IMG/VR virus record: IMGVR_UViG_3300032046_000001
Location: 1-64,000 of that record
Strand: one strand, 5' to 3'
DNA length: 64,000 bases
This document shows positions 486-46,987 of the stretch, in pieces (position 1 is the stretch's first letter; every line of letters starts with the position of its first letter). The notes under the pieces are model-generated. The model had not been told where the DNA came from, made no database searches, and saw only the letters and a program-made list of their open reading frames with translations. The position numbers and the translations under genes are program-made.

Positions 486-1112
486 TCAATATTCCTTATA
501 AAAATGATTATAAATATGATTCCACGATTTTCCATTTTTTATATACGAAACCATTACCGTTGAAATATCATATAATTTTGATATTTCAATATTTTTAAAT
601 CCCAATTTAATCAACATGTGAATTTGATGTATTTGTTTTTCTATTAATTTTGAAGGTCTATTTTCTTTAAGTATTTCACTCAATTTATTTTTATGTTCTT
701 CTGATAATTTTTTATCTTTATGTGATTCACTCATTTTCTTTTTAGATTCTTCTGAAAAATATTTACCAATATGATGTAATTGTTGATGTTCTCCATGAGA
801 TATCAATTCGAGATTATTTAAAATATTATTTTCTTTTATTTCATCTTTATGATGAACATCACACTCTTCTGTTATTTCTCCAATAAAAGTTTCATACATT
901 AATCTATGAATTTTAAATGTTTTTGTTTTATTTTTTTTGTATAATTTGATATTAAAATAATATTTAATATCTTTATACTGTTTTAATATTTTTTCTTTTC
1001 CAAATTTTAATGATTTAACTCTACCTAAATTACTAATCATATAATCTGGATAATCTTTTATAATTTTCCAAACTTCATTTTCTAAATCTAAATTATTATA
1101 ATTATCACTCAT
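486..1112 (-). CDS. NUMOD4-HNH homing-type endonuclease with NUMOD3 and C-terminal HTH
   Basis: EVWKII..YPDYMISNLGRVKS (NUMOD4), HRL...DVHHKDEIKENNILNNLE..H (HNH), SEESKKKMSE (NUMOD3). Confidence 0.9.
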   Translation of the reverse strand: MSDNYNNLDLENEVWKIIKDYPDYMISNLGRVKSLKFGKEKILKQYKDIKYYFNIKLYKKNKTKTFKIHRLMYETFIGEITEECDVHHKDEIKENNILNNLELISHGEHQQLHHIGKYFSEESKKKMSESHKDKKLSEEHKNKLSEILKENRPSKLIEKQIHQIHMLIKLGFKNIEISKLYDISTVMVSYIKNGKSWNHIYNHFYKEY

Positions 1113-1211
1113 TTTTTAAATTCTCCAGTTTGAATTTTACCAGTAAATAAAATTATAAGAGAGCGGGATTACTGGTTATCCTTTTCGAGTGATCATCTCT
1201 ATCTCTCTTAT
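1113..1211 (-). ncRNA. Structured leader RNA element, copy A (three-way junction plus pseudoknot), upstream of an HNH gene
   Basis: Minus strand reads AUAAGAGAG AUA GAG-AUGAUCA-CUC GAAAA GGAU-AACCAGUA-AUCC CG CUCUCUUAU ... UACUGGU ... ACUGGAG ... AUG. The same architecture recurs at three other loci with compensatory changes. Confidence 0.75.
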
Positions 1212-17874: not shown

Positions 17875-18506
17875 TATTCACCATCCAGTTTTATATGACA
17901 CCATATTTTTCCTAATTTTATTAATGAAATTGTTTGTCTACAAACTCCAAATATATTAGCGATTTCTGTCTGAGTTATTTTTAACTGTTTTATAATTGGA
18001 GAATTTGAAATTTGATATATTGTCTTAACTTGCCATTCTTCTAATTTTGAATTATTATTACTTTCTCCATTTTGAACTGAATTTTCACTCATTTTCTTTC
18101 TAGTTTTTTCTGAAGGGTGTTTTCCAAAAAGCACATGATTTTCACCTTTTGGATTATGATATATACTATGCTCTATTTTAGGCATTTTTTTTAAATTATT
18201 AATAAAATTATCTTCTTTATTTTCATTTATATGATGAACATCATAACCTTTTCCTAATTTTTCTTTGAAGGTTTCATAAACAAGATGATGAATTTTTTTA
18301 TTTAGTTTTTTATTTTTATTATATAATCTCAAACATAAATATTTCTGTTTTTTATATGGTTTTAATATGTTTCCATTTATCTTATTATACTTAAAACTTT
18401 TAATTCTACCAAAATTACTAACTTCATAATCTGGACAATCTTCTATAACTTTCCATATTTCATTTTCTAAATCATTAATATTTAAATTTTTATAAATTTC
18501 ACTCAT
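17874..18506 (-). CDS. NUMOD4-HNH homing-type endonuclease
   Basis: EIWKVIED.PDYEVSNFGRIKS; DVHHINENKEDNFINNL; C-terminal HTH ITQTEIANIFGV. Confidence 0.9.
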   Translation of the reverse strand: MSEIYKNLNINDLENEIWKVIEDCPDYEVSNFGRIKSFKYNKINGNILKPYKKQKYLCLRLYNKNKKLNKKIHHLVYETFKEKLGKGYDVHHINENKEDNFINNLKKMPKIEHSIYHNPKGENHVLFGKHPSEKTRKKMSENSVQNGESNNNSKLEEWQVKTIYQISNSPIIKQLKITQTEIANIFGVCRQTISLIKLGKIWCHIKLDGE

Positions 18507-21467: not shown

Positions 21468-22451
21468 TTAGACAAGATATTTATCAAGTTTTTCCAGGGT
21501 GGTTGTTTCAGTAACAATCTTTCCAGGTTTTTTCATTAATTTAAAAAATGGACTAGATGACTTTTTAACATCTTCTAAATCGTCAAAAACTTTACCATAC
21601 TCAGAACCCAATGCACTATACATGAAATTATATTGAACCGTAGAACACAAACCTTGAAATTCTTTCATACAGAAGTATGCTCTCTTATTAACATCATCAC
21701 AGATAACAAACGAAGACCAACCTAAACTATATAATCTTCTTATATTCGCGGTCCTCTCTAAGAAACTATATCCAAGATCCATCATATTCAAAACAGTAAA
21801 AATATTGTCTTTATGTACTGTTCTTGCCATAATAACATCTTTCTTTGGATCACCACTTATAGTTAATTGGGTAAAAGGAAGATGTGTCCAACGTACAACT
21901 GCCCACATTGTTTTGAGAAATTTTCTTCCGAGAATGGATAGTCTTGATTGAAGGAAATTCATTGATTGATCTGACATGATTAAATCGATAAGAGCAGCAT
22001 CAGACTGAACAGGAAACGGAATTGTTTTAATACCAGCGATTCTTGTACCAGCAAAAGTATCAACTTTAATCCATGTAGGTTCTAAACTTACAGAACTAAA
22101 ACTTGGTGGTTCTACTTTAACATCAATTTTTACTGTCGCTTTTTCACCTTGAGATATTTTCTTATCTTTTTCTGGTGCAGCGGGCATATTAATAACAACA
22201 CTTGGTGGTTTCTTACCTTGTTCTAATATGACACCATCGTCACTTCTATGATCATTTGTCTCAGCTTCATGTAGTTTTAACATACCTTTCTGAAAGAATA
22301 ATGATCTTTTACCTCTTGCAAAATTATTCGCAGCTTTGACAATATCATCCATCTTATAAATTAACACAAACTTCTCAATTACTTTTGAAATACCCGGCAA
22401 AACATTTGCGGAGACATTACTAGATACCAACATTGGGTAAACCACAATCAT
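21468..22451 (-). CDS. Hypothetical protein, probably structural
   Basis: SD GAGGAGG inside the upstream endonuclease gene precedes MIVVYPM (ATG at 22451). Confidence 0.65.
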   Translation of the reverse strand: MIVVYPMLVSSNVSANVLPGISKVIEKFVLIYKMDDIVKAANNFARGKRSLFFQKGMLKLHEAETNDHRSDDGVILEQGKKPPSVVINMPAAPEKDKKISQGEKATVKIDVKVEPPSFSSVSLEPTWIKVDTFAGTRIAGIKTIPFPVQSDAALIDLIMSDQSMNFLQSRLSILGRKFLKTMWAVVRWTHLPFTQLTISGDPKKDVIMARTVHKDNIFTVLNMMDLGYSFLERTANIRRLYSLGWSSFVICDDVNKRAYFCMKEFQGLCSTVQYNFMYSALGSEYGKVFDDLEDVKKSSSPFFKLMKKPGKIVTETTTLEKLDKYLV

Positions 22452-23035
22452 CTTAAATCCTCCTCTATATGATTCCAATTCCTTTTATTTTTAATATTAG
22501 AAATTGTCAATCGACTAACTCCAAACATATCAGCTATTTCTTGTTGAGTTAATATTCCTTCTTTTAATAATAATTTTATTTGAATAACTTGTTCTTCTGT
22601 TAATTTATGATTTGGATGATTTTCTCCTTTGACATTATAATGATTTTTAGACATTAATTTTTTTGTTTTGTCAGAAAAATGTTTACCCAAATTTGGACTA
22701 TTATTTTTATTATTATGAAAACTATTATGTTCTAATTTTGGCATTAATTTTAAATTTTCTAAATTATTATTTTCTTTATCTCCATTAATATGATGAATAC
22801 ATTCATCATTCTTTAATTTATAATTATTAAAAGTTTCATAAACTAATCTATGAATATAATTTAAATTATATTCATTATTTTCTTTATATAGCTTTATATT
22901 ATAATACTCATTAATATTTTTTAATTTTTTTAATATTTTACCACATTTATACCTTTTAAAACTTTTAATTCTGCCTAAATTACTTATAAGGTAATCTCCA
23001 TTGTATCCATCGATTTCTTTCCAAGTTTCATTCAT
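22448..23035 (-). CDS. NUMOD4-HNH homing-type endonuclease
   Basis: ETWKEIDGYNGDYLISNLGRIKS; HRLVYETF; CIHHINGDKENNNLENL; HTH LTQQEIADMFGVSR. Confidence 0.9.
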   Translation of the reverse strand: MNETWKEIDGYNGDYLISNLGRIKSFKRYKCGKILKKLKNINEYYNIKLYKENNEYNLNYIHRLVYETFNNYKLKNDECIHHINGDKENNNLENLKLMPKLEHNSFHNNKNNSPNLGKHFSDKTKKLMSKNHYNVKGENHPNHKLTEEQVIQIKLLLKEGILTQQEIADMFGVSRLTISNIKNKRNWNHIEEDLR

Positions 23036-25800: not shown

Positions 25801-27051
25801 TTATAATTCGTTTGGTTCGAGTATTTCTTTACGGATTGTATCTTTCACCAATTCGTCAAATGCGGTTCTAAAATCCATATCGGTCTCATATGTAATTGGA
25901 GCTTCTTTAACACGATATTTCTTGGTTGGATAATTTAGTAAATTATGCCATTGCCCTGTATCAATTTTCTTCTTATCCATTAAAAATTTATAATTAGACC
26001 AAAAATTTGAAAACCCGTGATTTAAACCACCTATAATTTCTACCTCAATATTTGAGGGATATAATTTGTTTTTAATGCATTTCATACTAGACATTATTCC
26101 ATTATATCCAATTTTTTCAACAAGTTTACTATCAAAACTTTTTTGTTTTAAATCGATTAACTGAAAAGTATTAAATTTGATCGATTTACCACCGGGCATA
26201 TTTTGATTTTGATTCATATATTTTAAATCATTAGTTGGTTTATTATACGGATTAATTGAAATTATATCTCTCAACTGATTAATAGCCAATAAACAAACAT
26301 TATACTGACTCAATTTCATAACGTACTTTGGAACCAAGAATGAATATAATCTTGATTTAAATCCCATTACTTTGTTAAGATCATCCGTCTCTAATTCTTT
26401 GTTACACATTGTATTTGCGATTGAATCCCAAACAACTATTGCTGGTCTATCCTCTTTTCTTTTATCTTTAAAAGTACACAAACTTTCTAAAAGTTGAAAA
26501 AGTTTTTCAACAGTAACACCAACGTGTGGTCTAATTTTAGGTTGGACAACACCAAGATTAAATAATCGAGCAACCGACATTGAATACTCAGCATCTAAAT
26601 ATATTATTGCAATATCACCACTATATTTTTTTTGTATGTTTCCTAAAAATTGACCAACAAACATTGATTTACCAGAACCTGGAGGTCCAATAACAACATT
26701 TAAAGCACCACTTGCAAATCCTCCTCCTAAAATACCATCAACAAGATCAATACCAGTTGGAAGAATATCTTTCACTCCAGTATCGAGTTTCAAATCTGTT
26801 GTTTTTTCTAAAAAATTATATAATTCATCATATAATTCTTTGACATCATCTGGGGATGCTTCAAATGTCTCATCTTCAGTCATGGATGATATATCTGAGG
26901 TATTTGTTTTTGATTTTCGTTTCTTTCTTGGTTTTACAACAACCTCATCGATATTTTTTAATTGAATATCACTTAATACAGCATTCTTGTCAATTTCCAC
27001 CTGAACAAATTCTGATTCTTCTCCACTATATTCTAATTCTTCATCATTCAT
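25801..27051 (-). CDS. recA: RecA/UvsX-like recombinase
   Basis: PTGIDLVDGILGGG, GPPGSGKS, YLDAE, VVWDSIA, INQLR, PGGKSIKF, KNK. Confidence 0.9.
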   Translation of the reverse strand: MNDEELEYSGEESEFVQVEIDKNAVLSDIQLKNIDEVVVKPRKKRKSKTNTSDISSMTEDETFEASPDDVKELYDELYNFLEKTTDLKLDTGVKDILPTGIDLVDGILGGGFASGALNVVIGPPGSGKSMFVGQFLGNIQKKYSGDIAIIYLDAEYSMSVARLFNLGVVQPKIRPHVGVTVEKLFQLLESLCTFKDKRKEDRPAIVVWDSIANTMCNKELETDDLNKVMGFKSRLYSFLVPKYVMKLSQYNVCLLAINQLRDIISINPYNKPTNDLKYMNQNQNMPGGKSIKFNTFQLIDLKQKSFDSKLVEKIGYNGIMSSMKCIKNKLYPSNIEVEIIGGLNHGFSNFWSNYKFLMDKKKIDTGQWHNLLNYPTKKYRVKEAPITYETDMDFRTAFDELVKDTIRKEILEPNEL

Positions 27052-27639: not shown

Positions 27640-29643
27640 TTATATCTCCAATTGTTCGAATCTTCTTCGAGGAAATTCATATTCTCTGCGTTCTTTAACC
27701 CAGTTATTAATGGGTGTTAGATAACCTACAACCCTTGTATACTTCTCATTTATTTGTTCTCCACATATTGGACACAATGCTCCATTAGTTACAGAAACAT
27801 GTCCGTTAGAACATTTAGCGAAACATGCGTTAAGAGCAAAATGATCTAATCCACAAGATGTCGCAAACGATATGAGATCTACCATTTGTTTTTTACTTGT
27901 TTTAGCACTGATGTTCAAATGACTAATTACGCCTCCTCCGAAGAACTTAGACAATTTCCCATCAATCTTTGCTCTTGAAATCAAATCAATGTTTTCCCAA
28001 AGTGGGACAAATTGATTAGAATATAATATACTTTCACTATCACCAAAATACACTTTGTCTTTTTTAGCCAAGTTTATAGCGGCACCTTCACCTGGGATCT
28101 GTTCCAGATTAAAAGGAACTTGGTACTCACCAGCCAAATCATTTAATAGATCATTACAATATTTAAAAAGTTCAATCGCTTCATCTTGAGACTGAACTAA
28201 ATCAATACCTAATGTTTTAAACGCTTCATATATTCCGTTAAAACCAATCGTACTAAAAAACATTGTGTCAAGATCAAGCCATTTCATAGGCTTAAAAAAT
28301 TGAAGAAAATTCTGATTAATTCTATCTTTTATTAGTGCTCGATGTGCAACTAATATTTTGGCCGAATCATACATTGCACGTTTAAGCGATTCCTTAAATA
28401 AATCGAGAGTTTTGGTCTTTCTTGCAAGTCTTACAAGATTGATTGTAACAACCCTATGACTACCTAAATTCAATCCACCATTACCAAAACTATCAATTCC
28501 TTTATATTTCATAAGTTCAGTTTTATTATTAATCATTCGACAACAACTTGCAATCTTGGCTTTATCATTTGTTATGAATATGTTAAATACACCCTCCGTA
28601 TTATATTCAGCCAAGTCTTCTAAGAATGCCTTATCTCCAACTTCACGATTCTCAGCATCAATAAACAAACTTACTGTCACAATTGGGAATCGATATGGAA
28701 TATTAGTAAGAGGATCTTTCTGAGATATAAATTTCATGAAAACACGTTGAACAGCCATAATCACTTCGATTATATCAAGTGGAGAAGTACCATCGGGATA
28801 ATAATAATTTTTAAACATGTTTTCTAATGTTTTTCTACAATATAAAGAAACATTGGAAAATGGGCTATCACCACCAATTCTAAAATTATTATTGGCAACA
28901 TGTACAAATGATTGAAAATCATTTTCGATTTTCTTTTCAATCTCACATATCAAACTATCTGGCCATAATTTTTCTTCAAAGGTTACACCAGTTTCCATTG
29001 TTGTTAGCAAATCATTAATACTACTAACCATCTCATTAACTTCTTTATTGATATACCATGCATAATTAACTAAAAGATCACCAAAGGCAACAGCACCAGC
29101 GAATTCTTGAGACATTGACATAAGATGTTCAATACACTGTGCTATAAATGATGATGCTCTCTTAGGTGGTTTACTACTCAAAGTTCCATATGGTCGCCCA
29201 TTCAACATAATGTTATATGTTGATATAGCAACACAATATGGAACATTAATCTTCGTTAAATCATGTGGATAGAACTTTCCATCAAGACAACTTGAAATTA
29301 ATCGATTTGCCTCTTCTAATCCAAATATTTTTTGGACATATTTCCACAATAAATAATACCCATCTAATTTCATCAGTCCTTTCATAATTTCTGATGAAAA
29401 AGTATTTAAATTTTTTAACTGGCCAACATTAGCATTAGGATCAACAGAAATATCACTTGTGTGATTTTCAAAATATTGCCGACTAATCGTGGCAATATCT
29501 AATTTATCTCTCGATATTCCTGATAACTCTAAATAGTCTTTTCCCTTTGGTGTGTTATTAAATTTATTGTATAAATCATTAAACTCTGATGGAAAATTCA
29601 TTTCAATCCTAAGCATAATTTCTAACCCTCTTATAAACTTCAA
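27640..29643 (-). CDS. nrdD: Anaerobic (class III) ribonucleoside-triphosphate reductase
   Basis: YPHDL, YC, SQEFAGA, ASCCR, EQIPGE, GGVISH, C..GH..CPICG, TRVVGYL glycyl-radical motif. No ATP cone is evident, and the start may be the ATG at 29616. Confidence 0.95.
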   Translation of the reverse strand: MKFIRGLEIMLRIEMNFPSEFNDLYNKFNNTPKGKDYLELSGISRDKLDIATISRQYFENHTSDISVDPNANVGQLKNLNTFSSEIMKGLMKLDGYYLLWKYVQKIFGLEEANRLISSCLDGKFYPHDLTKINVPYCVAISTYNIMLNGRPYGTLSSKPPKRASSFIAQCIEHLMSMSQEFAGAVAFGDLLVNYAWYINKEVNEMVSSINDLLTTMETGVTFEEKLWPDSLICEIEKKIENDFQSFVHVANNNFRIGGDSPFSNVSLYCRKTLENMFKNYYYPDGTSPLDIIEVIMAVQRVFMKFISQKDPLTNIPYRFPIVTVSLFIDAENREVGDKAFLEDLAEYNTEGVFNIFITNDKAKIASCCRMINNKTELMKYKGIDSFGNGGLNLGSHRVVTINLVRLARKTKTLDLFKESLKRAMYDSAKILVAHRALIKDRINQNFLQFFKPMKWLDLDTMFFSTIGFNGIYEAFKTLGIDLVQSQDEAIELFKYCNDLLNDLAGEYQVPFNLEQIPGEGAAINLAKKDKVYFGDSESILYSNQFVPLWENIDLISRAKIDGKLSKFFGGGVISHLNISAKTSKKQMVDLISFATSCGLDHFALNACFAKCSNGHVSVTNGALCPICGEQINEKYTRVVGYLTPINNWVKERREYEFPRRRFEQLEI

Positions 29644-34017: not shown

Positions 34018-34480
34018 TTTTTACAACATCCTCCCACGCCATTCTTGCAAGAGAATAAGCGTCGGCTAAATTGTCATCAGAGAACTCAATGCCAAATTTT
34101 TTATAAACCTGTAACAGCATCAAATTTTTCTTGGCATTACCACTACCAGTAATAAATTTTTTTAATACTTTTGGTTCGATAACTTTGAAATTTAAAGATT
34201 CTTTCTTCATCATGATTCTAATATAATAATGAAGAGCACCCAATTGAATAAGGGTATTTCCCTTCGAATTAAATGATACTCCTTCTATATTAATAATAGA
34301 ATCTTTTTGAGTATATTTTTGAATTTCTTTCCATATACTTATAAAACGAGCTTCAATTTCTTCAGTACTTTTGGTATTAAATAATTTTGATTGTATTATA
34401 TTGCCTCTTTCATCGAGAACAATAATTCCAGTTCCGGTTAGCGAAGGATCTATGCCTATAAATATTTTTTTATCCAACAT
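33998..34480 (-). CDS. ruvC: RuvC-like Holliday junction resolvase
   Basis: IGIDPSLTGTG, IEG, LKKFITGSGNAKK, DDNLADAYSLA; likely ATG at 34480. Confidence 0.9.
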   Translation of the reverse strand: MLDKKIFIGIDPSLTGTGIIVLDERGNIIQSKLFNTKSTEEIEARFISIWKEIQKYTQKDSIINIEGVSFNSKGNTLIQLGALHYYIRIMMKKESLNFKVIEPKVLKKFITGSGNAKKNLMLLQVYKKFGIEFSDDNLADAYSLARMAWEDVVKNDKIFD

Positions 34481-35219
34481 GTGACCAACTCCTTCCAATT
34501 TTTATATATGAAATTGTTCTTCGACTAACTCCGAACATATCAGCTATTTCTTGTTGAGTTAATATTCCATCTTTCAATAATAATTTTATTTGAATAACTT
34601 TTTGTTCGGTTAATTTTGAATTTGGATGTTTTTCACCTCTAAAATCAGCATGGTTTTCACTCAATTTCTTTTTGTGTTCTTCTGAAAGTGAAAATCCTTT
34701 CTTTTTTTCACTTATTTTATTTTTTGATTCTTCTGAGTGGTGTTTTCCAAGCATTGATTTTGGATGTTTTTCACCTCTAAAATCAGCATGGTTTTCACTC
34801 AATTTCTTTTTGTGTTCTTCTGATTTAGGTCGTCCTTTTCTGTCACAACTCATTTTCTTTTTCGATTCGTCAGAAAAGATATAACCACTTATTCCATCAC
34901 CACCATCAGTTATATTAACAAGAGATCCAGTTTTTAAATTAATTCTACCAATTTCATTAATTAATTGTTTTTCAAATTTAAATGAATTTTCTTCATTTAA
35001 ATTTTCATATAATTTAAAAACAATTGGTTCTAATCCAGACTGTTTAATTTTATTTATTTTATTTTTAAATAATCTACATCGACTATTGTCTAATTCTTTG
35101 TATCTATTATCTTTTCCTTTACCAATATATATTGGTTCAAAAATAAAACATACATCATTATAACAATATCTTCCAGATTTTCTTGGATCTAAATAAATAT
35201 AAATGTAAAATTTGTTCAT
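34470..35219 (-). CDS. GIY-YIG-like homing-type endonuclease with NUMOD3 repeats and HTH
   Basis: FYIYIYLDPR...PIYIGKGKDNR...E..LI..IGR...LVNITDGGDG; NUMOD3 repeats. Confidence 0.85.
   Translation of the reverse strand: MNKFYIYIYLDPRKSGRYCYNDVCFIFEPIYIGKGKDNRYKELDNSRCRLFKNKINKIKQSGLEPIVFKLYENLNEENSFKFEKQLINEIGRINLKTGSLVNITDGGDGISGYIFSDESKKKMSCDRKGRPKSEEHKKKLSENHADFRGEKHPKSMLGKHHSEESKNKISEKKKGFSLSEEHKKKLSENHADFRGEKHPNSKLTEQKVIQIKLLLKDGILTQQEIADMFGVSRRTISYIKIGRSWSHVG
34621..34823. repeat. Exact 65-bp intragenic direct repeat (duplicated NUMOD3-like module)
   Basis: 34621-34685 is identical to 34759-34823 and encodes SEEHKKKLSENHADFRGEKHP twice. Confidence 0.9.
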
Positions 35220-36161: not shown

Positions 36162-36881
36162 TTAACCCTTATCAAATGTGACATTGGGTAAACTACCAAG
36201 AGTCATCTTATCAACAAGATCTCTCTTCATTTCCTTACCTTCTTCTAATATTTCAGCTCCAAGAGGAATTTCACCAAACGGGGTTCTTAAATTTCCACCA
36301 CCATATCTTTGACGAATACGACCAATCAATATCATAATATCAGCAAGAGCAAGTTGACAAAATAATAATTGAAATTCATTTGGAATTTTTCTCAGATCTT
36401 CAGGATGGTTGCGTTCGTACTCAATAGTTATATTCCTAACATTAATTGGTGTTGGTGAGATGCGTACAATATTTGGATGGAAGAACTCGATCGTTCTATC
36501 GTAATTAGAGAATGTCTTCAACATACCCGCAATTTCGGTATCAAGTGCCCAACTTCTTAGTTCTCCTTGTGTAAATGGACCAAGAGGAGGAAATCCATTA
36601 ATTAAGTAATCACTCATATCTCCATACATGTTTTTAACATTGAGTATTTCCAATCCTTCTGGATCTTCAATATAGTACTCATTTCCACGTCCTGGTACTT
36701 GTGCGCTTTCAAGTAATGGATTCAAATATACTTTGTTTGTGTCAGGAAAATATCGTGAGAATTCACGAAGGGTATAATTTTTAAAATAATCGATAATTTT
36801 AGAATCATCTAATTCCAGAACCATGAATGAAAATCCTAAATTATCTTTTATATACTCTAAGACGCGCGTCTGAGTTAACAA
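36162..36881 (-). CDS. Neck/head-completion protein (T4 gp13-like)
   Basis: VLEYIKDNLG..LELDD..I..F..Y N-terminus and GRIRQRY.G..GEI.LG..I.EEG C-terminus; TTG start at 36881 after SD AAGGAG. Confidence 0.6.
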   Translation of the reverse strand: MLTQTRVLEYIKDNLGFSFMVLELDDSKIIDYFKNYTLREFSRYFPDTNKVYLNPLLESAQVPGRGNEYYIEDPEGLEILNVKNMYGDMSDYLINGFPPLGPFTQGELRSWALDTEIAGMLKTFSNYDRTIEFFHPNIVRISPTPINVRNITIEYERNHPEDLRKIPNEFQLLFCQLALADIMILIGRIRQRYGGGNLRTPFGEIPLGAEILEEGKEMKRDLVDKMTLGSLPNVTFDKG

Positions 36882-37567
36882 TGGATGTCTCCTTCTATTA
36901 ATGACCAACCTTTCCCAGATTTTATTCTAGAAACTGTTGATATACTAATGTTAAATATATTACTAATTTCTTTTTGAGTTATCTTTAACTGTTTTATAAT
37001 AGGAGAATTTGTAATTTTGTAAATAACTACAACTTGCCATTCTTTTAATTTAGAATTCGAATTATTTTCTCCTACATTTTTTTGACTTATTTTTAATTTT
37101 GTTTTGTTAGAAAGAAATTTTCCAATTCGTTTATTTCTCATTATTTCTTTTGATTTATTCGAATGTTTTTTTCCAAACATTGGATTCGACTCATCTTTAT
37201 TACCATTAATCATATGAAACACTCTATGTTCTTTTTTAGTCATTAAATTTAAATTTTCATAATAATTATCTTCTTTATTTTCATTAATATGATGAATACA
37301 CTCGTTTGATTTTAATTTATAATTATTAAAAATTTCAAATAGTAAAATATGAATTGACTTATTTTTAACTTTTCGATTTTTACACAAAACAATATAAAAA
37401 TATCCACTACTATCTTTATTTTGTCTTAATATTCTTCCTTCTTTGTATCTTTTAAAACTTTTAACTCTACCAAGATTACTGACTTGATAATCTGGATAAT
37501 CTTCTATAGTTTTCCAAACTTCATTTTCTAAATCACTAATGTCTAAATTTTCAAATATTTTAATCAT
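36875..37567 (-). CDS. NUMOD4-HNH homing-type endonuclease
   Basis: EVWKTIEDYPDYQVSNLGRVKS; CIHHINENKEDN..ENL; NPMFGKKHS; likely ATG at 37567. Confidence 0.9.
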   Translation of the reverse strand: MIKIFENLDISDLENEVWKTIEDYPDYQVSNLGRVKSFKRYKEGRILRQNKDSSGYFYIVLCKNRKVKNKSIHILLFEIFNNYKLKSNECIHHINENKEDNYYENLNLMTKKEHRVFHMINGNKDESNPMFGKKHSNKSKEIMRNKRIGKFLSNKTKLKISQKNVGENNSNSKLKEWQVVVIYKITNSPIIKQLKITQKEISNIFNISISTVSRIKSGKGWSLIEGDIHC

Positions 37568-37661
37568 TTTATAATCGCCTGTCAATTATTTCCTGAAATT
37601 AATTTAAAGAGAGCAGGAAGTTCAGGATTACTTCTTTTCGACGGCCAATCTATCTCTCTTT
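37568..37661 (-). ncRNA. Structured leader RNA element, copy B
   Basis: AAAGAGAG AUA GA-UUGGCCG-UC GAAAA GAAG-UAAUCCUGAA-CUUC CUG CUCUCUUU ... UUCAGGA ... ACAGG ... AUG. Confidence 0.75.
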
Positions 37662-37666
37662 TTTAT

Positions 37667-38002
37667 TTAAATGCTATTCCATAATACCATTGCTCTTTCT
37701 TTTCGTGGAACTTCTTGTTTTTCGCGTTCTATATCTAATTCGAGTTTCTTTTTTAATGGTGTTATTTCATCTATTTTTTTACCACATCTTAAACAAATTT
37801 TTTTGATATATCGTTTATCAAAATCTATAGGATCTTTTATTAATCTACAAGGTGGGGATTCTGGAGGCATAGGACGACCGTCAGTTATTTTTTTACAGTC
37901 TTCAAGATATCTTTGATGATGTTTTATATTACTTATTAATTGTACTTCTGTAATTCTTTCTAATATTTCCCAATCATGAAAACCTAATTTACACCAGTTC
38001 AT
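37667..38002 (-). CDS. Hypothetical protein with zinc-finger-like motif
   Basis: CKLGFHDW...CLRCGK. Confidence 0.65.
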   Translation of the reverse strand: MNWCKLGFHDWEILERITEVQLISNIKHHQRYLEDCKKITDGRPMPPESPPCRLIKDPIDFDKRYIKKICLRCGKKIDEITPLKKKLELDIEREKQEVPRKERAMVLWNSI

Positions 38003-38882
38003 TATCTAATATATCTCTTGTCTCACTTCGAATCGTATAATCATTATCATTTTTAGATTCATAAACTTGAAGGAGTCCATAAGTCAAATCAAATAATCTT
38101 CTAATCTTGGCATATACTTCTTTAGTATCACCTAAGTCTCTTCGAAAAACATCTTTATCTAATTTTTCATTAGTCTTGAGATCCCACAAACGACAAGTAT
38201 CAGGTGATATTTCATCAGCTAATATAAGATGTTGATCTTCAGTTCTGTGACCAAATTCGAGTTTCATATCGACCAGTAAAATTCCATGTTTTTCAAAAAA
38301 TTCTTTGATGTGAATATTGATAAGTTTAGTTAAATTTTTTATTTTGAATAAAATAATATCAACTTTACACTTATATATTGGAAGATATTCTTTTTCAGTT
38401 GGAACCTTTCTTATTAATCCCAATTTTCTAATATGGTCTTCTGTAATCATTGGATCGTCCAATTCATCACTTTTATAATAATACTCTATAATAGGTTCAA
38501 CTATTGGTGTTCCTTCTTCTATATCAAGTCTTTTTGATAAACTTCCAGCAACAACATTTCGAACAACAACTTCAATTGGAAGTATATTGACTCTATTAAC
38601 TAACATCTCCCTATCATTTAATTTAGTAATAAAATGAGTACTGATGTTATTACTGTGCAAATGAGAAAATAATATAGATGAAGAACTATTATTACAAATA
38701 CCCTTATCTTCAATTACAGCCTTCTTCTTTCCATTGAAAGCTGTTGCGTCATCATTAAATCGTTGTATTAAAATATTAGGATCATTAGTTTCAAATAATG
38801 TCTTTGCCTTACCAGAATAAAGTTCTTTTCCTCTTTTAATATGACCCCATTTAGGATCAGTATAATCAAATAAATCGTTCAT
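37989..38882 (-). CDS. purC: SAICAR synthetase
   Basis: LYSGKAK, DDATAFNG, PIEVVVRNVVAGS, YKSDELDDP, LVDMKLEFG, LADEISPDTCRLWD, DKDVFR; ATG at 38882 with SD GAGGAG. Confidence 0.95.
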   Translation of the reverse strand: MNDLFDYTDPKWGHIKRGKELYSGKAKTLFETNDPNILIQRFNDDATAFNGKKKAVIEDKGICNNSSSSILFSHLHSNNISTHFITKLNDREMLVNRVNILPIEVVVRNVVAGSLSKRLDIEEGTPIVEPIIEYYYKSDELDDPMITEDHIRKLGLIRKVPTEKEYLPIYKCKVDIILFKIKNLTKLINIHIKEFFEKHGILLVDMKLEFGHRTEDQHLILADEISPDTCRLWDLKTNEKLDKDVFRRDLGDTKEVYAKIRRLFDLTYGLLQVYESKNDNDYTIRSETRDILDNELV

Positions 38883-38889
38883 ATTCTCC

Positions 38890-40035
38890 TCAAAAATTCT
38901 CAAAATCAAAATCACTTCTATTAGAAAATAAGATATCAACATCTTCTTCTAATACTTCTACATTCCCTTTTCTTAGTGCCTTGTACATTGTATTTGACTC
39001 GGTGAAATTATCATTATTCAAAATATTAGTCACATAGTTTCTTTTAGCGATAATTTCTGTATTCGGTGGATCTTTAAAAACTTCGGATATTATTTTAAAC
39101 CACACCAATCTTAAATTATTAGATATAATTGAAGTTTTATTTTCTTCTTCAATTATTTTTGATATAGTTTTATCATTACTATTTTTTATAAATATTTTTT
39201 TCTTATTGAGAACATTATGATATAAATCTTCCATACTACCAACACACTCAATTAGACCACTGATTATTTTTGGAATGGTTTTAGGACCAATACTTTTAAT
39301 CTTAGGAACATCATCAGTTTTATCACCAAGTACAGCCATAACCAATGGAAAATATTTATCTGGTATGTCAACTTTAAATTTTAAATATGTTGACATAATT
39401 TCACCTTTTTTAACTATCTTTATTTTCTGACCTGATTTACAAAATTGATATATGTCACTTCCGAGAGAAATAGTCTGAAATAAATCATGATCATTTGAAT
39501 AAATTATATTACATGAATCTTGTAATGTAATCAATGAATTACTTATAAGATAGTATGGAATAAAATCAGCTTCGAAATTTTGTAACAAAAATAATTTACA
39601 ACTTGGAATTTTATTTATAACTTTTTCGGATAATTTCAAATTATTTTGAATAGTAGAAAAAAATACATCTTTGTCTATTTGATTAAGATTAAATAAATCA
39701 CCAATTTTACGATTACTTTTATAATTTTTATCAATATTCGTATGATAATATGAATGTCCCATTTCTGCGAAAAATATGAAATTAATATCGAGACTACGTT
39801 TTATCGCATATTTTTTATGGAATGAAAGAAAAGATATCAAAGACTCAAAAATAGAAGTATCAATAAATTTAGAATATTTTGTAGATTCTACAATATTAAC
39901 AACAAATTCTTCCAAATAGAGACAATTTAAGATGTTACGTAAATCTATAAATAAATTTAAAATTTTATAATTATTAGAATATGATAAAATGTTGTCTAAA
40001 ATCGAATATGTGGGGTAATAAGAAATGACGTTCAT
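38890..40035 (-). CDS. 5'-3' exonuclease / T4 RNase H-like (FEN family)
   Basis: FID, YKSNR, FEADFI, SNDHDLFQ, LGDKTDDVPKIKSIGPKT; ATG at 40035 coupled to the upstream mini-ORF. Confidence 0.85.
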   Translation of the reverse strand: MNVISYYPTYSILDNILSYSNNYKILNLFIDLRNILNCLYLEEFVVNIVESTKYSKFIDTSIFESLISFLSFHKKYAIKRSLDINFIFFAEMGHSYYHTNIDKNYKSNRKIGDLFNLNQIDKDVFFSTIQNNLKLSEKVINKIPSCKLFLLQNFEADFIPYYLISNSLITLQDSCNIIYSNDHDLFQTISLGSDIYQFCKSGQKIKIVKKGEIMSTYLKFKVDIPDKYFPLVMAVLGDKTDDVPKIKSIGPKTIPKIISGLIECVGSMEDLYHNVLNKKKIFIKNSNDKTISKIIEEENKTSIISNNLRLVWFKIISEVFKDPPNTEIIAKRNYVTNILNNDNFTESNTMYKALRKGNVEVLEEDVDILFSNRSDFDFENF

Positions 40036-40085
40036 AACTGTCCTGACCATCGAGGATCTAAATAAGTATAAATATAATAATTCAT
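40032..40085 (-). pseudogene. 17-codon remnant of a GIY-YIG-like endonuclease
   Basis: MNYYIYTYLDPRWSGQL* versus MNKFYIYIYLDPRKSGRY of 34470..35219; intact SD AGGAG. Confidence 0.75.
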
Positions 40086-40178
40086 AAATAATCTCCTGTT
40101 AATTATTTCCTGAAAAGAAAAAGAGAGAAGGAAGTTCAGGATTACTTCTTTTTCGAGCTTAAGTCTCTATCTCTCTTA
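40086..40178 (-). ncRNA. Structured leader RNA element, copy C
   Basis: AAGAGAG AUA GAG-ACUUAAG-CUC GAAAAA GAAG-UAAUCCUGAA-CUUC CUU CUCUCUU ... UUCAGGA ... ACAGGAG ... AUG. Confidence 0.75.
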
Positions 40179-42753: not shown

Positions 42754-43404
42754 TCATATAACATTGTACCATGATCTTCCATTTTTAATATTTGAAATAG
42801 TACTCTGATCAATATTATATATTTTTGATATATCTTTATTTTTAAATTTCAATTTTAATAACATTTTAATTTGGATAATTTGTTTAATAACTAATTTATG
42901 ATTTGTATTATTTTCTCCTATAAATTTTCCATTAAGTGATTCACTTATTCTTTGTTTTGTTATATCAGATCTATGTTTTCCAAAATTTGGATTATTTTCT
43001 CCTTTCATGTGTTCGCTAATTTTTTGTTTGTGTCTATCTGATAATTTTCTTCCTATTGTGTTTTTATTATTAATTTTATGTAAACTATTATGATCTGATT
43101 TTGTTTTCTTTTCTAAATTTTTCCAATAATTATTTTTTATATTTTCATCTTTGTGATGGACACACTCATCCTGTTTTAATTTATCATTATAGAAAGTTTC
43201 ATAAACTAATATATGAATTTTTTTACTTTTACCATGATCATTTCTATATAAACTAATCTGAAAATAACCATGAGAATCTGTACATAATTTTAATATTTTT
43301 TCTTTATTAAATTTCAGTGACTTTATTTTTCCAAAGTCACTGATCAAATAATCTGAATATTCATTAATTATTTTCCATGTTTCTTTATTCTTCATCTTCA
43401 TCAT
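42754..43404 (-). CDS. NUMOD4-HNH homing-type endonuclease
   Basis: ETWKIINEYSDYLISDFGKIKS; CVHHKDENIKNNYWKNLE; NPNFGKHRS; HTH. Confidence 0.88.
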   Translation of the reverse strand: MMKMKNKETWKIINEYSDYLISDFGKIKSLKFNKEKILKLCTDSHGYFQISLYRNDHGKSKKIHILVYETFYNDKLKQDECVHHKDENIKNNYWKNLEKKTKSDHNSLHKINNKNTIGRKLSDRHKQKISEHMKGENNPNFGKHRSDITKQRISESLNGKFIGENNTNHKLVIKQIIQIKMLLKLKFKNKDISKIYNIDQSTISNIKNGRSWYNVI

Positions 43405-45313: not shown

Positions 45314-46297
45314 CTATAGATTCAAATAATCTAAAATCTCATTTATATTTGTTGAATTTATTCCAATTTTACCAACTACAATACCAGCCACTATATTCGC
45401 CAATTCAACTGATTCTTCTAATGACAATATTTCTGATAAATATGATAATGTAAGTGTTGATATTACTGTATCACCCGCACCACTTACATCATAAACTTCT
45501 TTAGCTTTAGTTGGTAAACTTATCATTTTGTGTCCATCGTTTCTTATAATAGATATTCCATCTTTTCCCCGTGTAACTATAAGATAATCAAGATTTAATT
45601 TATGATATAATTTCATTCCAGCTTTATATATTTTATCTTCAGTATCAACAACCATCTTAGAAATTTTTGATAGTTCTTTTAAATTGGGTGTTAAAAAATT
45701 GGCATTTTTATATTTAAGATAATTAGATCCTTTAGGATCTATAAAAATTAATTTATTATTTTTTTTACACGTATTAATTATTTTCTGAGTCAATTTAAAA
45801 GTCAAAACTCCTTTTAAATAATCAGAAATAATAACTGCCGAACATTTGTCAATATGACTATTGACAAATTCTAATATTAATTTTTCTAATTTAGAATCTA
45901 TTTCTCTCGTTGATTCTTTATCAAATCTAATTAATTGATAATTTTCTGAAAAAATTCTATTTTTTATTGTTGTTGGTCTGTCATAATCTATAAAAATACC
46001 ATCAATTGAACACACATTCTTTAATTTATTTAATACAAATTCTCCATTTGAATCATTTCCGATTATTCCACATGGAATAACATTTCCACCTAATGATAGT
46101 ATATTAGATATAACATTTCCACTTCCACCAATCATTTTAAAAGTTTTTTCAATATCCACAATAGGAACTGGAAATTCTGGAGAAATGCGTTCTACTTTAC
46201 CAATAATATATTTATCTACCATAATATCTCCAATAACTAATATATTATGATAATTAAATTTAGAAAATATATTTTTAATTTTTTCTTTACTGAACAT
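45314..46297 (-). CDS. rfaE: D-glycero-D-manno-heptose-7-phosphate kinase (HldE/RfaE domain I, PfkB family)
   Basis: VIGDIMVDKY..G.VERISPEFPVPIV, GGSGNV, RPTTIKNR, ISDYLKG, DPKG, TPNLKE, VYDVSGAGDTV. Confidence 0.92.
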   Translation of the reverse strand: MFSKEKIKNIFSKFNYHNILVIGDIMVDKYIIGKVERISPEFPVPIVDIEKTFKMIGGSGNVISNILSLGGNVIPCGIIGNDSNGEFVLNKLKNVCSIDGIFIDYDRPTTIKNRIFSENYQLIRFDKESTREIDSKLEKLILEFVNSHIDKCSAVIISDYLKGVLTFKLTQKIINTCKKNNKLIFIDPKGSNYLKYKNANFLTPNLKELSKISKMVVDTEDKIYKAGMKLYHKLNLDYLIVTRGKDGISIIRNDGHKMISLPTKAKEVYDVSGAGDTVISTLTLSYLSEILSLEESVELANIVAGIVVGKIGINSTNINEILDYLNL

Positions 46298-46901
46298 GAT
46301 ACCAGATTTTTCCTCTTTTTATATCCGAAATCGTTATTCTACTAACTCCAAACATGTCAGCTATTTCTTGTTGGGTTAATATTCCTTCTTTTAATAATAA
46401 TTTTATTTGAATTACTTGTTCTTCTGTTAATTTGTGTTGTGGATGATTTTCACCTTTATAATTTAATTTTCCACTTTTAAACTCTTCTTTTCTCGTTTTA
46501 CTTATTTTAATTTTTGTTTCATTTAATAATATTTTTCCTTTGTTATGATATTTTGAGTGTCTTGAATGTGGTTCAGATTTCAAATTATCAATAAAATTAT
46601 TTTCTTTATCTTCGTTTGTATGATGAACATCATAATTTTTTTCTAATTTTTTGTTGAAAGTTTCATAAACTAATCGATGAATAACTTTAGTTTTAGATTT
46701 CTTATTCTTATTATGTAAATCAACATAAAAATATCCCTTATGATTTCTACACTGTTTTAATATTCTACAATCAGTACCTTTCCATTTTATAAAACTTTTA
46801 ATTCTCCCAAGATTACTAACTTGATATTCTGGATATTCTTCAATAGTTTTCCAAACTTCATTTTCTAAATCATTAATATCTAAATTTTCATATATTTTCA
46901 T
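46287..46901 (-). CDS. NUMOD4-HNH homing-type endonuclease
   Basis: EVWKTIEEYPEYQVSNLGRIKS; HRLVYETF; DVHHTNEDKENNFIDNL; ATG at 46901 after SD AAGGAG. Confidence 0.9.
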   Translation of the reverse strand: MKIYENLDINDLENEVWKTIEEYPEYQVSNLGRIKSFIKWKGTDCRILKQCRNHKGYFYVDLHNKNKKSKTKVIHRLVYETFNKKLEKNYDVHHTNEDKENNFIDNLKSEPHSRHSKYHNKGKILLNETKIKISKTRKEEFKSGKLNYKGENHPQHKLTEEQVIQIKLLLKEGILTQQEIADMFGVSRITISDIKRGKIWYHVQ

Positions 46902-46987
46902 TATAACTCCTTGTATTATTTTCCTTGAATGATTAAAGAGAGCAGGTAGCAAGGTCTACTTTTCGAGCGATCGACTCTATCTCTCTT
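46902..46987 (-). ncRNA. Structured leader RNA element, copy D
   Basis: AAGAGAG AUA GAG-UCGAUCG-CUC GAAAA GUAG-ACCUUG-CUAC CUG CUCUCUU ... CAAGG ... CAAGGAG ... AUG. Confidence 0.75.

What the first reader, a model, noticed from the sequence alone, without database searches (positions are those of the whole stretch)
37568..37661. Leader P3 loop has two alternative targets 14-15 nt apart, the second on the Shine-Dalgarno sequence
In every copy the sequence complementary to the P3 loop appears twice downstream. Copy A has UACUGGU then ACUGG(AG), B has UUCAGGA then CAGG(CG), C has UUCAGGA then CAGGA(G), and D has CAAGG then CAAGG(AG). Offsets are 15, 14, 14 and 14 nt, and both sites change together with the loop. 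Inference: a two-state translational switch in which the proximal pseudoknot leaves the SD free and distal pairing blocks it. Alternatively, in an RNA dimer the partner's loop could cover the SD while the own loop holds the proximal site.
Basis: partly seen in the sequence, partly recalled or inferred. Interest (0 to 1): 0.8.

Follow-up and report, generated by a model that had tools for sequence, protein, structure and literature searches.

The report
RNA loop with decoy and ribosome-site targets
Four leader RNAs in this giant-phage fragment belong to a known but unexplained RNA family (int-alpA), and one hairpin loop in them can pair with either of two downstream sites, a decoy or the ribosome-binding site of a homing-endonuclease gene, which points to control of translation by the RNA.

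Summary
The leader is on the minus strand (copy B: 37660 to 37565). Copies A, B and D precede NUMOD4/HNH homing-endonuclease genes. Copy C precedes only a 17-codon GIY-YIG remnant.

In all four copies the P3 loop (L3) is complementary to two downstream sites, 14-15 nt apart. The second site covers the Shine-Dalgarno (SD) sequence.

In about 48 related phage leaders, with nine or more loop types, both sites follow the loop:
- Site 1: 85 of 90 Watson-Crick pairs.
- Site 2: 56 of 60 at the two bases 5' of the G-run.
- No loop shuffle reached either value.

- The leader is a divergent member of Rfam int-alpA (RF02996). Copy B scores 36.6 bits against a cut-off of 35.8.
- Site 2 lies in the loop of a fourth, covarying hairpin (P4). 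P4 starts right after site 1 and ends just before the AUG.
- The same two-site layout with P4 occurs in bacterial int-alpA RNAs from many phyla.

The best reading is an anti-SD loop, a decoy and the SD acting together as a translational control element. That it switches, which state is ON, and what triggers it are all untested. The dimer alternative is weak.

Verdict: a new variant of a known kind, of moderate to high interest.

The parts
37565..37660 (-). Copy B, whole leader from P1 to the ATG of a NUMOD4/HNH_3/NUMOD3 homing-endonuclease gene (ORF 36875-37567). Parts: P1 37660-37654 with 37613-37607; J12 AUA; P2 37650-37640; J23 GAAAA 37639-37635; P3 37634-37630 with 37621-37617; J31 CUG.
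   Evidence: coordinates. Rfam int-alpA, 36.6 bits, E 1.7e-6. (Pfam); own covariance model, 63.5 bits.
37622..37629 (-). Copy B, P3 loop L3 (AAUCCUGA), the anti-SD-like element with two alternative partners.
37591..37597 (-). Copy B, site 1 (UUCAGGA). It is the proximal partner of L3 (the family's pseudoknot) and lies 9 nt after P1 and 1 nt before P4.
   Evidence: Duplex energy -8.2 kcal/mol.
37571..37589 (-). Copy B, hairpin P4 (AUAAUUG / CGAUUAU) with loop ACAGG. It ends 3 nt before the ATG.
   Evidence: The MFE fold predicts exactly this hairpin.. P4 covaries across the family.
37578..37581 (-). Copy B, site 2 (CAGG). It is the distal partner of L3, lies inside the P4 loop and overlaps the weak SD (AGG).
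   Evidence: Duplex energy -4.6 kcal/mol.
1110..1209 (-). Copy A leader, upstream of the HNH homing-endonuclease ORF 486-1112. L3 AACCAGUA 1177-1170; site 1 UUACUGGU 1146-1139; P4 1137-1132 with 1123-1118; site 2 ACUGG 1129-1125; SD GGAG 1126-1123.
   Evidence: Own covariance model 50.4 bits. No Rfam hit at E<=10.
40083..40177 (-). Copy C leader. L3 AAUCCUGA 40143-40136; site 1 UUCAGGA 40114-40108; P4 40108-40101 with 40093-40086; site 2 CAGGA 40098-40094. It is followed only by a 17-codon GIY-YIG remnant (MNYYIYTYLDPRWSGQL*) and then the 5'-3' exonuclease gene (40050-38890).
   Evidence: Own covariance model 65.2 bits.
46899..46987 (-). Copy D leader, upstream of the HNH homing-endonuclease ORF 46287-46901. 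L3 ACCUUG 46955-46950; site 1 CAAGG 46927-46923; P4 46919-46915 with 46907-46903; site 2 CAAGG 46913-46909; SD GGAG 46910-46907.
   Evidence: Own covariance model 44.0 bits.

Best explanation
Each leader is a cis-acting RNA of the int-alpA family.

Architecture:
- A three-way junction of P1, P2 and P3, with nearly invariant junction strands UA, GAAAA and CU(G).
- An AU-rich linker, then site 1.
- A hairpin P4 directly after site 1, carrying the SD in its loop and 3' strand.
- The start codon 0-6 nt after P4.

The P3 loop (L3) is an anti-SD-like sequence, (U/A)CC plus 2-4 variable bases. It has two partners that exclude each other:
- Site 1, a decoy or anti-anti-SD. This pairing forms the family's pseudoknot, which probably stacks on P4.
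- Site 2, the SD and the 2-3 bases 5' of it in the P4 loop. This pairing is a kissing interaction that would block 30S binding.

The element would therefore set how much homing endonuclease is translated. In bacteria it would do the same for the first gene downstream of an integrase.

Shown: the architecture, the covariation of both pairings and of P4, and the family membership.

Inferred: that the RNA toggles; that loop:site 1 is the permissive state and loop:site 2 the repressed state; and that a trigger shifts the balance. The trigger is unknown. Candidates are a ligand or factor bound at the conserved junction, or unfolding of P1 by a ribosome terminating on the upstream gene.
For: Family membership:
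- Rfam int-alpA hits: copy B 36.6 bits, L160 46.5 bits, against a cut-off of 35.8.
- The Rfam consensus ends in aAgGG opposite the loop's CCuU, so the site-1 pseudoknot partner is part of the model.

Three-way covariation in phage leaders:
- Nine or more loop types.
- Site 1: 85/90 Watson-Crick pairs. Site 2: 56/60 at two positions. 0 of 5000 shuffles reach either.
- On the covariance-model alignment, loop:site 2 shows UA10/GC8/CG3 and AU10/GC7 at its two variable pairs. Score 0.132 against 0.056 for shuffles, 0/500.

Same layout in bacteria:
- E. coli islands have loop (A/G)CCUUA, site 1 UAAGG(U/C) and site 2 AAGGU, which is the SD.
- About 100 bacterial genomes from many phyla show it too.
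- Loop:P4-loop complementarity is 4.12 for cognate pairs against 3.01 for foreign pairs, 0/2000 permutations.
- Loop:site-2 covariation is 0.123 against 0.075, 0/500.

P4:
- 94.3% paired in bacteria and 92.6% in phages, with compensatory changes at every pair.
- Cognate stem halves pair better than permuted ones, 0/2000.
- The start codon lies within a few nt of P4.

Other points:
- The two duplexes are close in energy, -6.8 against -5.2 kcal/mol.
- The leader precedes two unrelated endonuclease families, HNH and GIY-YIG. It is therefore an expression module, not part of one gene.
Against: - There are no expression, probing or RNA-seq data. Only DNA metagenome runs hold this sequence.
- Site 1 is usually the stronger partner and is transcribed first, so the distal state needs a trigger that has not been identified.
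- Site 2 is short, 4-6 bp. Covariation fades at the third base (10/30), and in bacteria already at the second (17/58).
- P4 in the phage copies is thermodynamically weak, mean -1.1 kcal/mol. It is only slightly longer than stems around the SDs of other window genes, 5.6 against 4.7 bp.
- In GC-rich relatives P4 itself hides the SD, so the proximal state may not be ON.
- The loop:site-1 count on the phage covariance-model alignment did not beat shuffles (54/500). I attribute this to misaligned linker columns.
- L156 matches neither site. L153 and L181 have single-base irregularities.
- MFE z-scores of the four copies are unremarkable, -0.43 to +0.51. Pseudoknots are not modelled there.
Confidence: 0.5

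Rival explanations
1. A constitutive damper, not a switch. The folded leader always keeps translation of the endonuclease low. In one conformer the SD sits in P4, stabilised by stacking on the loop:site-1 pseudoknot. In the other it is covered directly by the loop. The two sites are redundant ways to hide the ribosome-binding site and to insulate the gene from read-through transcripts.
For: - In bacterial members P4 is GC-rich and includes part of the SD, for example CGCCU[GGGA]GGGCG.
- Site 1 abuts P4, with a gap of 0-3 nt.
- Most leaders start within 30 nt of an upstream stop codon, so they lie inside operons.
- From established knowledge: the phage T4 homing endonuclease I-TevI is held down by a hairpin that sequesters its ribosome-binding site.
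Against: - If only hiding the SD mattered, a plain hairpin would do.
- It does not explain the strictly conserved junction strands shared between E. coli and AT-rich phages.
- It does not explain why a decoy that competes with the SD for the same loop is the best-conserved pairing.
Confidence: 0.2
2. The trigger is translation of the upstream gene. A ribosome terminating a few nucleotides before P1 melts the 5' strand of P1 and collapses the junction. This changes which site the loop occupies, or opens P4. Downstream translation is thereby coupled, positively or negatively, to upstream translation.
For: - 62 of 86 bacterial leaders, and 24 of 48 phage leaders (many of them on truncated loci), have a same-strand ORF of at least 80 aa ending 30 nt or less before P1. 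In 37 of the bacterial ones it ends 10 nt or less before P1.
- Copy B starts 6 nt after the upstream stop codon.
- In E. coli the RNA follows the integrase stop codon.
Against: - Copy A lies 55 nt from the upstream stop codon.
- Eight of 43 phage leaders carry an AR9-type late-promoter match that would start transcription at the first base of P1. Those transcripts would contain no upstream ORF (consensus from PMC7598289).
Confidence: 0.12
3. Action in trans or as a dimer. The loop of another molecule pairs with site 2 while the molecule's own loop holds site 1. The other molecule could be a second leader copy with the same loop type, or a junction fragment released by cleavage in the AU-rich linker.
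For: - Rfam types int-alpA as 'Gene; sRNA'.
- Each of the four loop types in this 312-kb phage genome occurs at least twice: CCAGU x2, CCUGA x2, CCUUG x2, CCGAA x3.
- Copy C is an orphan leader with no endonuclease gene.
Against: - Each molecule has one loop, so a symmetric dimer cannot satisfy both sites.
- E. coli genomes usually carry a single copy, median one place per genome, yet they keep both sites.
- Repeated loop types are explained as well by duplication and module exchange between copies.
Confidence: 0.08
4. The junction plus pseudoknot is a structural or processing element, such as a self-cleaving or nuclease-resistant fold or a protein-binding site. On this view the second complementarity is incidental, because both sites are simply SD-like.
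For: - Bacterial hammerhead ribozymes also cluster near prophage integrase genes (PMC3088659).
- The topology (three-way junction, loop-to-3'-tail pseudoknot, adjacent hairpin) resembles flavivirus exonuclease-resistant RNAs. This comparison is from my own memory and was not tested.
Against: - The bases of site 2 that are not SD bases follow the loop: 56/60, and both-side changes.
- The junction strands do not match the hammerhead core. CUGANGA is absent, and Rfam gave no ribozyme hit even at E<=10.
Confidence: 0.05

Closest known systems
int-alpA RNA motif (Rfam RF02996; one of the 224 candidate structured RNAs of Weinberg et al. 2017, PMC5737381)
   Same: - A three-way junction with J12 UA, J23 GAAAA and J31 CU(G).
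- A P3 loop containing CC, with a 3' tail complementary to it.
- Copy B (36.6 bits) and relative L160 (46.5 bits) pass the curated cut-off of 35.8.
- Occurs on mobile DNA.
   Different: - The phage copies are AT-rich with an invariant P1 (AGAGAG). Most fall below the cut-off or go undetected: A gave no hit, L191 scored 31.6 and L177 29.0.
- They precede homing-endonuclease genes in a jumbo phage rather than lying between int and alpA-like genes.
- The Rfam model stops at site 1. P4 and the second site on the SD are not in it.
- I found no published function. Two full-text hits for 'int-alpA' were a gene-order label and an sRNA checklist. The 2017 supplement could not be read.
Translational riboswitches that bury the SD in a pseudoknot (preQ1-II, SAM-II/SAM-V); comparison from established knowledge
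   Same: A conserved fold upstream of the start codon, in which a loop or tail pairing that includes the SD decides access for the ribosome.
   Different: - No ligand is known here.
- One loop chooses between a decoy and the SD, instead of the SD being part of the ligand-binding fold.
- The regulated genes are mobile-element genes, not metabolic ones.
IncI-alpha/IncB plasmid repZ/repA control (Rfam PK-repZ, PK-repBA); comparison from established knowledge
   Same: A hairpin loop has two competing partners, one of them a short sequence next to the SD, and the choice sets the translation rate.
   Different: - There the competitor is a trans antisense RNA, and the pseudoknot activates translation.
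- Here both partners are in cis on the same leader, and the sign of the effect is unknown.
RBS-sequestering hairpins of phage T4 homing endonucleases (I-TevI and others; reviewed in PMC3014915)
   Same: Translation of a phage homing endonuclease is restrained by RNA structure at its ribosome-binding site.
   Different: - T4 uses a simple hairpin, relieved by a late promoter that starts inside it.
- Here the element is a conserved multi-helix RNA with a pseudoknot, shared with bacterial integrative islands.

Membership tests
int-alpA RNA (RF02996) | Scores at or above the curated gathering cut-off (35.8 bits) against the Rfam covariance model | tested here: inconclusive
   - Copy B scores 36.6 bits, but only with permissive filters on a 161-nt slice. 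The whole-window gathering scan found nothing.
- Copy A gave no hit at E<=10.
- Relatives: L160 46.5, L191 31.6, L177 29.0 bits.
- Copies C and D were not scanned individually.
int-alpA RNA (RF02996) | Three-way junction P1/P2/P3 with conserved junction strands UA, GAAAA and CU(G) | tested here: met
   - All four copies parse this way.
- P1 is 97.8%, P2 100% and P3 99.5% paired, with compensatory changes, in 46 distinct phage leaders.
- Bacterial members give the same result.
int-alpA RNA (RF02996) | Pseudoknot between the P3 loop and the 3' tail shortly after P1 | tested here: met
   - Site 1: 85/90 Watson-Crick pairs, 0/5000 shuffles.
- In bacteria, covariation 0.119 against 0.089, 0/500.
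- The count on the phage covariance-model alignment was not significant, which I attribute to misaligned linker columns.
int-alpA RNA (RF02996) | Genomic setting next to integrase or alpA-type genes of integrated elements | tested here: not met
   - In the window the leaders precede HNH homing-endonuclease genes or a GIY-YIG remnant in a jumbo phage.
- The E. coli members do lie between int and an HTH-regulator region.
- The setting is what the name refers to. The covariance model does not test it.
Translational RNA switch (SD / anti-SD / anti-anti-SD) | One element has two partners that exclude each other, and one partner overlaps the ribosome-binding site | tested here: met
   - The same loop bases pair with site 1 and with site 2.
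- Site 2 overlaps the SD core and lies 5-10 nt before the start codon.
Translational RNA switch (SD / anti-SD / anti-anti-SD) | The two states exist and give different translation rates | not testable with these tools
   No RNA data are available. Reporters, toeprinting and structure probing are needed.
Riboswitch | Direct binding of a small ligand to the conserved fold changes the structure | not testable with these tools
   The only indirect hint is that the junction strands are invariant from E. coli to AT-rich phages.
Hammerhead or other known self-cleaving ribozyme | Matches a ribozyme family model or its catalytic core (CUGANGA ... GAAA ... UH) | tested here: not met
   - No ribozyme family was hit, even at E<=10.
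- J12 is UA, not CUGANGA, as read directly from the sequence.

The most novel reading that the evidence does not exclude
int-alpA is a widespread class of genuine RNA switch, either a riboswitch or a sensor of ribosome or translation state. Its conserved junction senses a universal cellular signal. That signal moves an anti-SD loop between a built-in decoy and the real ribosome-binding site. In this way it would time expression of the first cargo gene behind integrases in bacterial islands across many phyla, and of free-standing homing endonucleases in jumbo phages.
Probability: 0.25. Interest if true: 0.8.

Novelty: new variant of a known kind. Interest (0 to 1): 0.6.

Why it matters
int-alpA is an orphan structured RNA. 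It is in Rfam, typed as an sRNA, and the library I searched holds no study of its function.

Three findings turn it into a concrete, cheaply testable model of cis translational control:
- Its loop has a second, covarying target on the SD.
- That target is presented in a conserved fourth hairpin next to the start codon.
- The layout is kept from E. coli islands to AT-rich jumbo phages.

The work also shows that two unrelated homing-endonuclease families in giant phages share a portable RNA expression module. This bears on how selfish nuclease genes are kept harmless to their host genome.

Finally, the loop, decoy and SD triplets occur in at least nine natural variants. These could serve as natural compensatory mutants for experiments.

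Tried and rejected
- **Rfam gathering scan of the whole window:** no hit. The family appeared only in a permissive scan of a short slice.
- **Megablast of 6 kb against GenBank phages:** no match.
- **Literature:** searches for 'int-alpA', RF02996 and related terms gave nothing on function. The supplement of the 2017 paper is not held.
- **Loose viral scan (GATAGA..TCGAAAAG):** Only L117 and L127 were usable divergent members. L003, L076, L102 and L118 were rejected as chance.
- **MAFFT alignments A1 and A2:** too poorly registered in the loop and site columns to count pseudoknot pairs. I used anchored parsing in Python and covariance-model alignments instead.
- **MFE folding:** z-scores are unremarkable. 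Pseudoknots are not modelled, so this says little either way.
- **P4 length against SD-flanking stems of other window genes:** only a small excess. The support for P4 comes from covariation.
- **Unanchored search for site 2 in GC-rich bacteria:** weak contrast, 4.27 against 3.74. I replaced it with a test restricted to the P4 loop.
- **RNA evidence:** only DNA metagenome runs hold the sequence.
- **Hammerhead identity:** considered and rejected, because the core is absent.
- **DNA-level operator for the endonuclease's own HTH domain:** considered and rejected. The same loop type occurs with both HNH and GIY-YIG genes, and the inverted copy sits exactly in a conserved RNA hairpin loop.
- **Pfam on downstream bacterial genes:** almost nothing.

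Full report
**What is at the coordinates**

The window is AT-rich (about 28% GC), and most genes in this region are on the minus strand. Read on the minus strand, 37661-37568 is the untranslated stretch between a small upstream ORF (stop codon at 37669-37667) and an ATG at 37567. The ORF that follows (36875-37567) has NUMOD4, HNH_3 and NUMOD3 domains, so it is a free-standing homing endonuclease.

The string AAGAGAGATAGA that opens the leader occurs four times with no mismatch, always on the minus strand: at 1209 (A), 37660 (B), 40177 (C) and 46987 (D). A covariance model built later finds these four and no others in the window.

A, B and D precede NUMOD4/HNH genes. C is followed by only 17 codons that look like the N-terminus of a GIY-YIG endonuclease, then a stop, then the 5'-3' exonuclease gene.

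The window holds eight HNH-type genes and one GIY-YIG gene. Only three of these nine have the leader.

**Architecture**

All copies parse in the same order:
- P1 (AAGAGAG / CUCUCUU)
- J12, AUA
- the P2 hairpin
- J23, GAAAA
- the P3 hairpin with a variable loop (L3)
- J31, C(U)G or CUU
- the 3' strand of P1
- an AU-rich linker of 5-16 nt
- site 1
- 0-3 nt
- hairpin P4, whose loop holds site 2 and the first part of the SD
- 0-6 nt
- the start codon

For copy B the plain MFE fold predicts P4 exactly.

**Check of the observation**

To ask whether this exceeds chance, I collected relatives:
- A strict pattern scan of viral contigs gave 14 loci.
- The same scan of metagenome contigs gave 65 loci.

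Nine matches lie on one 312-kb contig. Its leaders are identical to A, B, C and D, so the window is almost certainly part of it.

A descriptor scan gave 48 distinct leaders, including four from E. coli. The loop cores include CCAGU, CCUGA, CCGAA, CCUUG, CCUAA, CCUCAA, CCUAUU, CCUUCA, CCCUA, CCCGA, CUCUUC, CUAUUC and the full anti-SD CUCCUA.

I anchored the comparison on the loop's C-run and each site's G-run, so the anchors do not depend on complementarity. Thirty distinct triples gave these results:
- Site 1: 85/90 Watson-Crick pairs over three positions (loop shuffles: mean 42.5, maximum 59).
- Site 2: 30/30 at the first base 5' of the G-run, 26/30 at the second and 10/30 at the third.
- For two positions at site 2 that is 56/60, against a shuffle mean of 24.6 and a maximum of 38.
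- 0 of 5000 shuffles reached the observed value in either case.

So site 2 is the CC:GG core plus two, sometimes three, covarying bases.

As a check independent of my anchors, I built a covariance model from one phage leader and aligned 60 hits (46 distinct) to it. The model does not fit pseudoknot columns. On that alignment the loop:site-2 pairs show UA10/GC8/CG3 and AU10/GC7. The covariation score is 0.132, against 0.056 for shuffles (0/500) and at most 0.038 for slid partners.

The same count for loop:site 1 was not significant (54/500). Inspection shows the site-1 columns are scattered within the variable AU-rich linker. I therefore rely and on direct reading for site 1.

Exceptions:
- L156 has loop CCUGA with a site 1 of UCGGGA and a site 2 of AUAGG. 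It looks like a recombinant.
- L153 and L181 have one-base irregularities.

**What it is**

A permissive Rfam scan of a 161-nt slice matched copy B end to end to int-alpA (RF02996): 36.6 bits against a cut-off of 35.8, E 1.7e-6. Relative L160 scores 46.5, L191 31.6 and L177 29.0. Copy A is not detected, and the fast filters miss everything in a whole-window scan.

The Rfam consensus has the same junction strands. Its loop is AaaCCuUua and its tail ends in aAgGG, so the site-1 pseudoknot partner is already part of the known motif. The model stops there.

I used the Rfam consensus printed by the tool as a BLAST query and found the motif in 220 E. coli genomes. There it lies between a tyrosine integrase gene and an unannotated gene of about 300 aa, which is followed by an HTH regulator.

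Those RNAs also have two sites and a P4. One example reads loop GCCUUA, site 1 UAAGGC, P4 GCGU[GAAAGGUG]ACGC, then the AUG one base later.

They came from Proteobacteria, Acidobacteriota, Nitrospirota, Planctomycetota, Verrucomicrobiota, Firmicutes and Chloroflexota. Results from these loci:
- 86 of 99 distinct RNAs show a P4 candidate starting within a few nt (-2 to +6, mostly 0-2) of site 1.
- Loop to P4-loop complementarity is 4.12 for cognate pairs against 3.01 for foreign pairs (0/2000 permutations).
- On a covariance-model alignment of 100 bacterial members, P1 is 94.8%, P3 99% and P4 94.3% paired, with compensatory changes at every pair of these three helices.
- Loop:site 2 alone scores 0.123 against 0.075 (0/500; slid partners at most 0.062).
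- Loop:site 1 alone scores 0.119 against 0.089 (0/500).
- In the anchored test, site 2 in bacteria follows the loop mainly at the first flanking base (40/58; shuffle maximum 37).

Some members have loops with no CC, and both sites still follow the loop:
- L222: loop UCUCAA, sites UUGAGA and UUGAG.
- L228: loop UCAUUC, sites GAAUGA twice.
- L229: loop CUGUGA, sites UCACAG and CACAG.

This argues against the idea that both sites are merely SD-like.

**How it probably works**

The same loop bases serve both pairings, so the pairings exclude each other. The distal one covers the SD.

The two duplexes are close in predicted energy, on average -6.8 and -5.2 kcal/mol. Site 1 is the stronger in 39 of 47 leaders.

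Site 1 abuts P4, so the pseudoknot helix can stack on it. P4 in the phage copies is weak on its own (mean -1.1 kcal/mol). It is only modestly longer than chance stems. It covaries all the same.

The most economical reading is the classical three-part logic of translational control. The loop is the anti-SD, site 2 is the SD, and site 1 is an anti-anti-SD decoy built into a conserved fold.

Which state is permissive, and what moves the equilibrium, are inferences. Two clues bear on the trigger:
- The junction strands are essentially invariant from E. coli to AT-rich phages. That is typical of a ligand, a bound factor or a tertiary-contact site.
- 72% of bacterial leaders begin 30 nt or less after the stop codon of an upstream same-strand ORF. 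A terminating ribosome could then melt P1.

Copy A, however, lies 55 nt from its upstream stop codon. In addition, eight of 43 phage leaders carry a match to the AR9 late-promoter consensus A(-11)ACA-N6-U-A/G(+1) (PMC7598289) that places +1 at -2 to 0 of P1. Upstream translation therefore cannot be the universal trigger.

A constitutive damper in which both conformers hide the SD remains a serious rival. The dimer idea is the weakest, because each molecule has only one loop, and because E. coli genomes usually hold a single copy yet keep both sites.

**Context and module exchange**

The window encodes split multisubunit RNA polymerase beta/beta' homologues, UvsX, NrdD and PurC. These are typical of jumbo phages of the phiKZ or AR9 kind.

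The leader precedes both HNH genes and GIY-YIG genes.

Copies A and L013 share P3, the loop, site 1, P4 and site 2. They differ in P2 and in the family of the gene that follows. L013's P2 is identical to that of C and L010. So leader halves are exchanged between copies, and the loop/site 1/site 2 block travels as one unit.

This limits the number of independent events to roughly the number of distinct blocks (nine or more). That is still ample.

**Comparison with known systems, and verdict**

The RNA is a divergent member of a known family, so it is not categorically new. Three things appear to be new relative to the Rfam model and the literature I could search:
- the P4 hairpin and the second, covarying loop target on the ribosome-binding site, kept across the whole family;
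- an AT-rich subfamily in jumbo phages;
- its use as a shared expression module for two homing-endonuclease families.

It works like SD-sequestering pseudoknot riboswitches and like the repZ pseudoknot, where one loop has competing partners. No ligand, factor or expression effect has been shown.

**Limits**
- All evidence is comparative.
- The sequences are related, so shuffle counts overstate significance.
- My anchoring rules and P4 finder are heuristic.
- The covariance-model alignments lean towards their nested helices, but not towards the pseudoknot pairs.
- No RNA-level data exist for this phage.

Noticed in passing
window 40083-40177 (-), with 39990-40085 and 38890-40050: Leader copy C is intact but orphaned. 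It is followed by a 17-codon remnant of a GIY-YIG homing endonuclease (MNYYIYTYLDPRWSGQL*). The 5'-3' exonuclease (FEN-like) gene starts at 40050 in another frame. This looks like a decayed endonuclease cassette whose leader survived.
   Followed up: partly
window 486-1112, 17874-18506, 22448-23035, 34470-35219, 36875-37567, 42754-43404, 46287-46901 (all -); 57532-58221, 60383-60949 (+): The 64-kb window holds nine intact homing-endonuclease genes, eight NUMOD4/HNH-type and one GIY-YIG. Only three carry the leader. The upstream regions checked for leaderless genes show a small ORF running up to the 43404 start and an unstructured 49-nt spacer before the GIY-YIG gene.
   Followed up: partly
loci L006, L012, L013, L140, L141, L146, L147, L156, L159, L160, L181, L182, L187, L200; 5-45 nt upstream of P1: GGGAACAAA lies upstream of the leader in 11 related loci. 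Eight of 43 phage leaders have AACA-N6-T-A/G with the predicted +1 at -2 to 0 of P1. This matches the published late-promoter consensus of jumbo phage AR9 (PMC7598289). The window's four copies lack it.
   Followed up: partly
window 1110-1209 (A) compared with L013:1134-1232, L010 and window 40083-40177 (C): The leaders are mosaics. A and L013 share P3, the loop, site 1, P4 and site 2, but they differ in P2 and precede different endonuclease families (HNH and GIY-YIG). L013's P2 equals that of C and L010. This suggests recombination between leader copies within one genome.
   Followed up: no
L037:10112-10230, L045:65-180, L061:13508-13620 (approximate): Three viral contigs carry a similar junction (UA, a P2 hairpin, GAAAA, a short P3, CU) followed by a strong intrinsic-terminator-like hairpin and a U-run, instead of site 1, P4 and the SD. 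This may be a transcription-terminating variant of the family, or it may be unrelated. The loop has only weak complementarity to the tail.
   Followed up: no
window 3210-7313, 8038-10380, 25801-27051, 27640-29643, 37989-38942 (all -): The window encodes split multisubunit RNA polymerase beta/beta'-like proteins, a UvsX-like recombinase, an NrdD-like anaerobic ribonucleotide reductase and a PurC-like enzyme. The source is a 312-kb contig from a sediment metagenome with no near relative among GenBank phages.
   Followed up: partly
window 37583-37585 (-): In copy B a UUG lies 6 nt after site 1 (UUCAGGA), inside the 5' strand of P4. It is in frame with the endonuclease ATG six codons downstream. 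The other copies do not share this.
   Followed up: no
L156:2030-2126: This natural leader has loop CCUGA, which matches neither its site 1 (UCGGGA) nor its site 2 (AUAGG). Its GIY-YIG gene starts with UUG. It may be a recent recombinant, and it could serve as a natural mismatch control.
   Followed up: no
L222, L228, L229 (bacterial genome loci): These bacterial members have loops with no CC, yet both downstream sites follow the loop (for example GAAUGA twice in L228). In L228 the second site sits where an SD would be, without being SD-like.
   Followed up: partly
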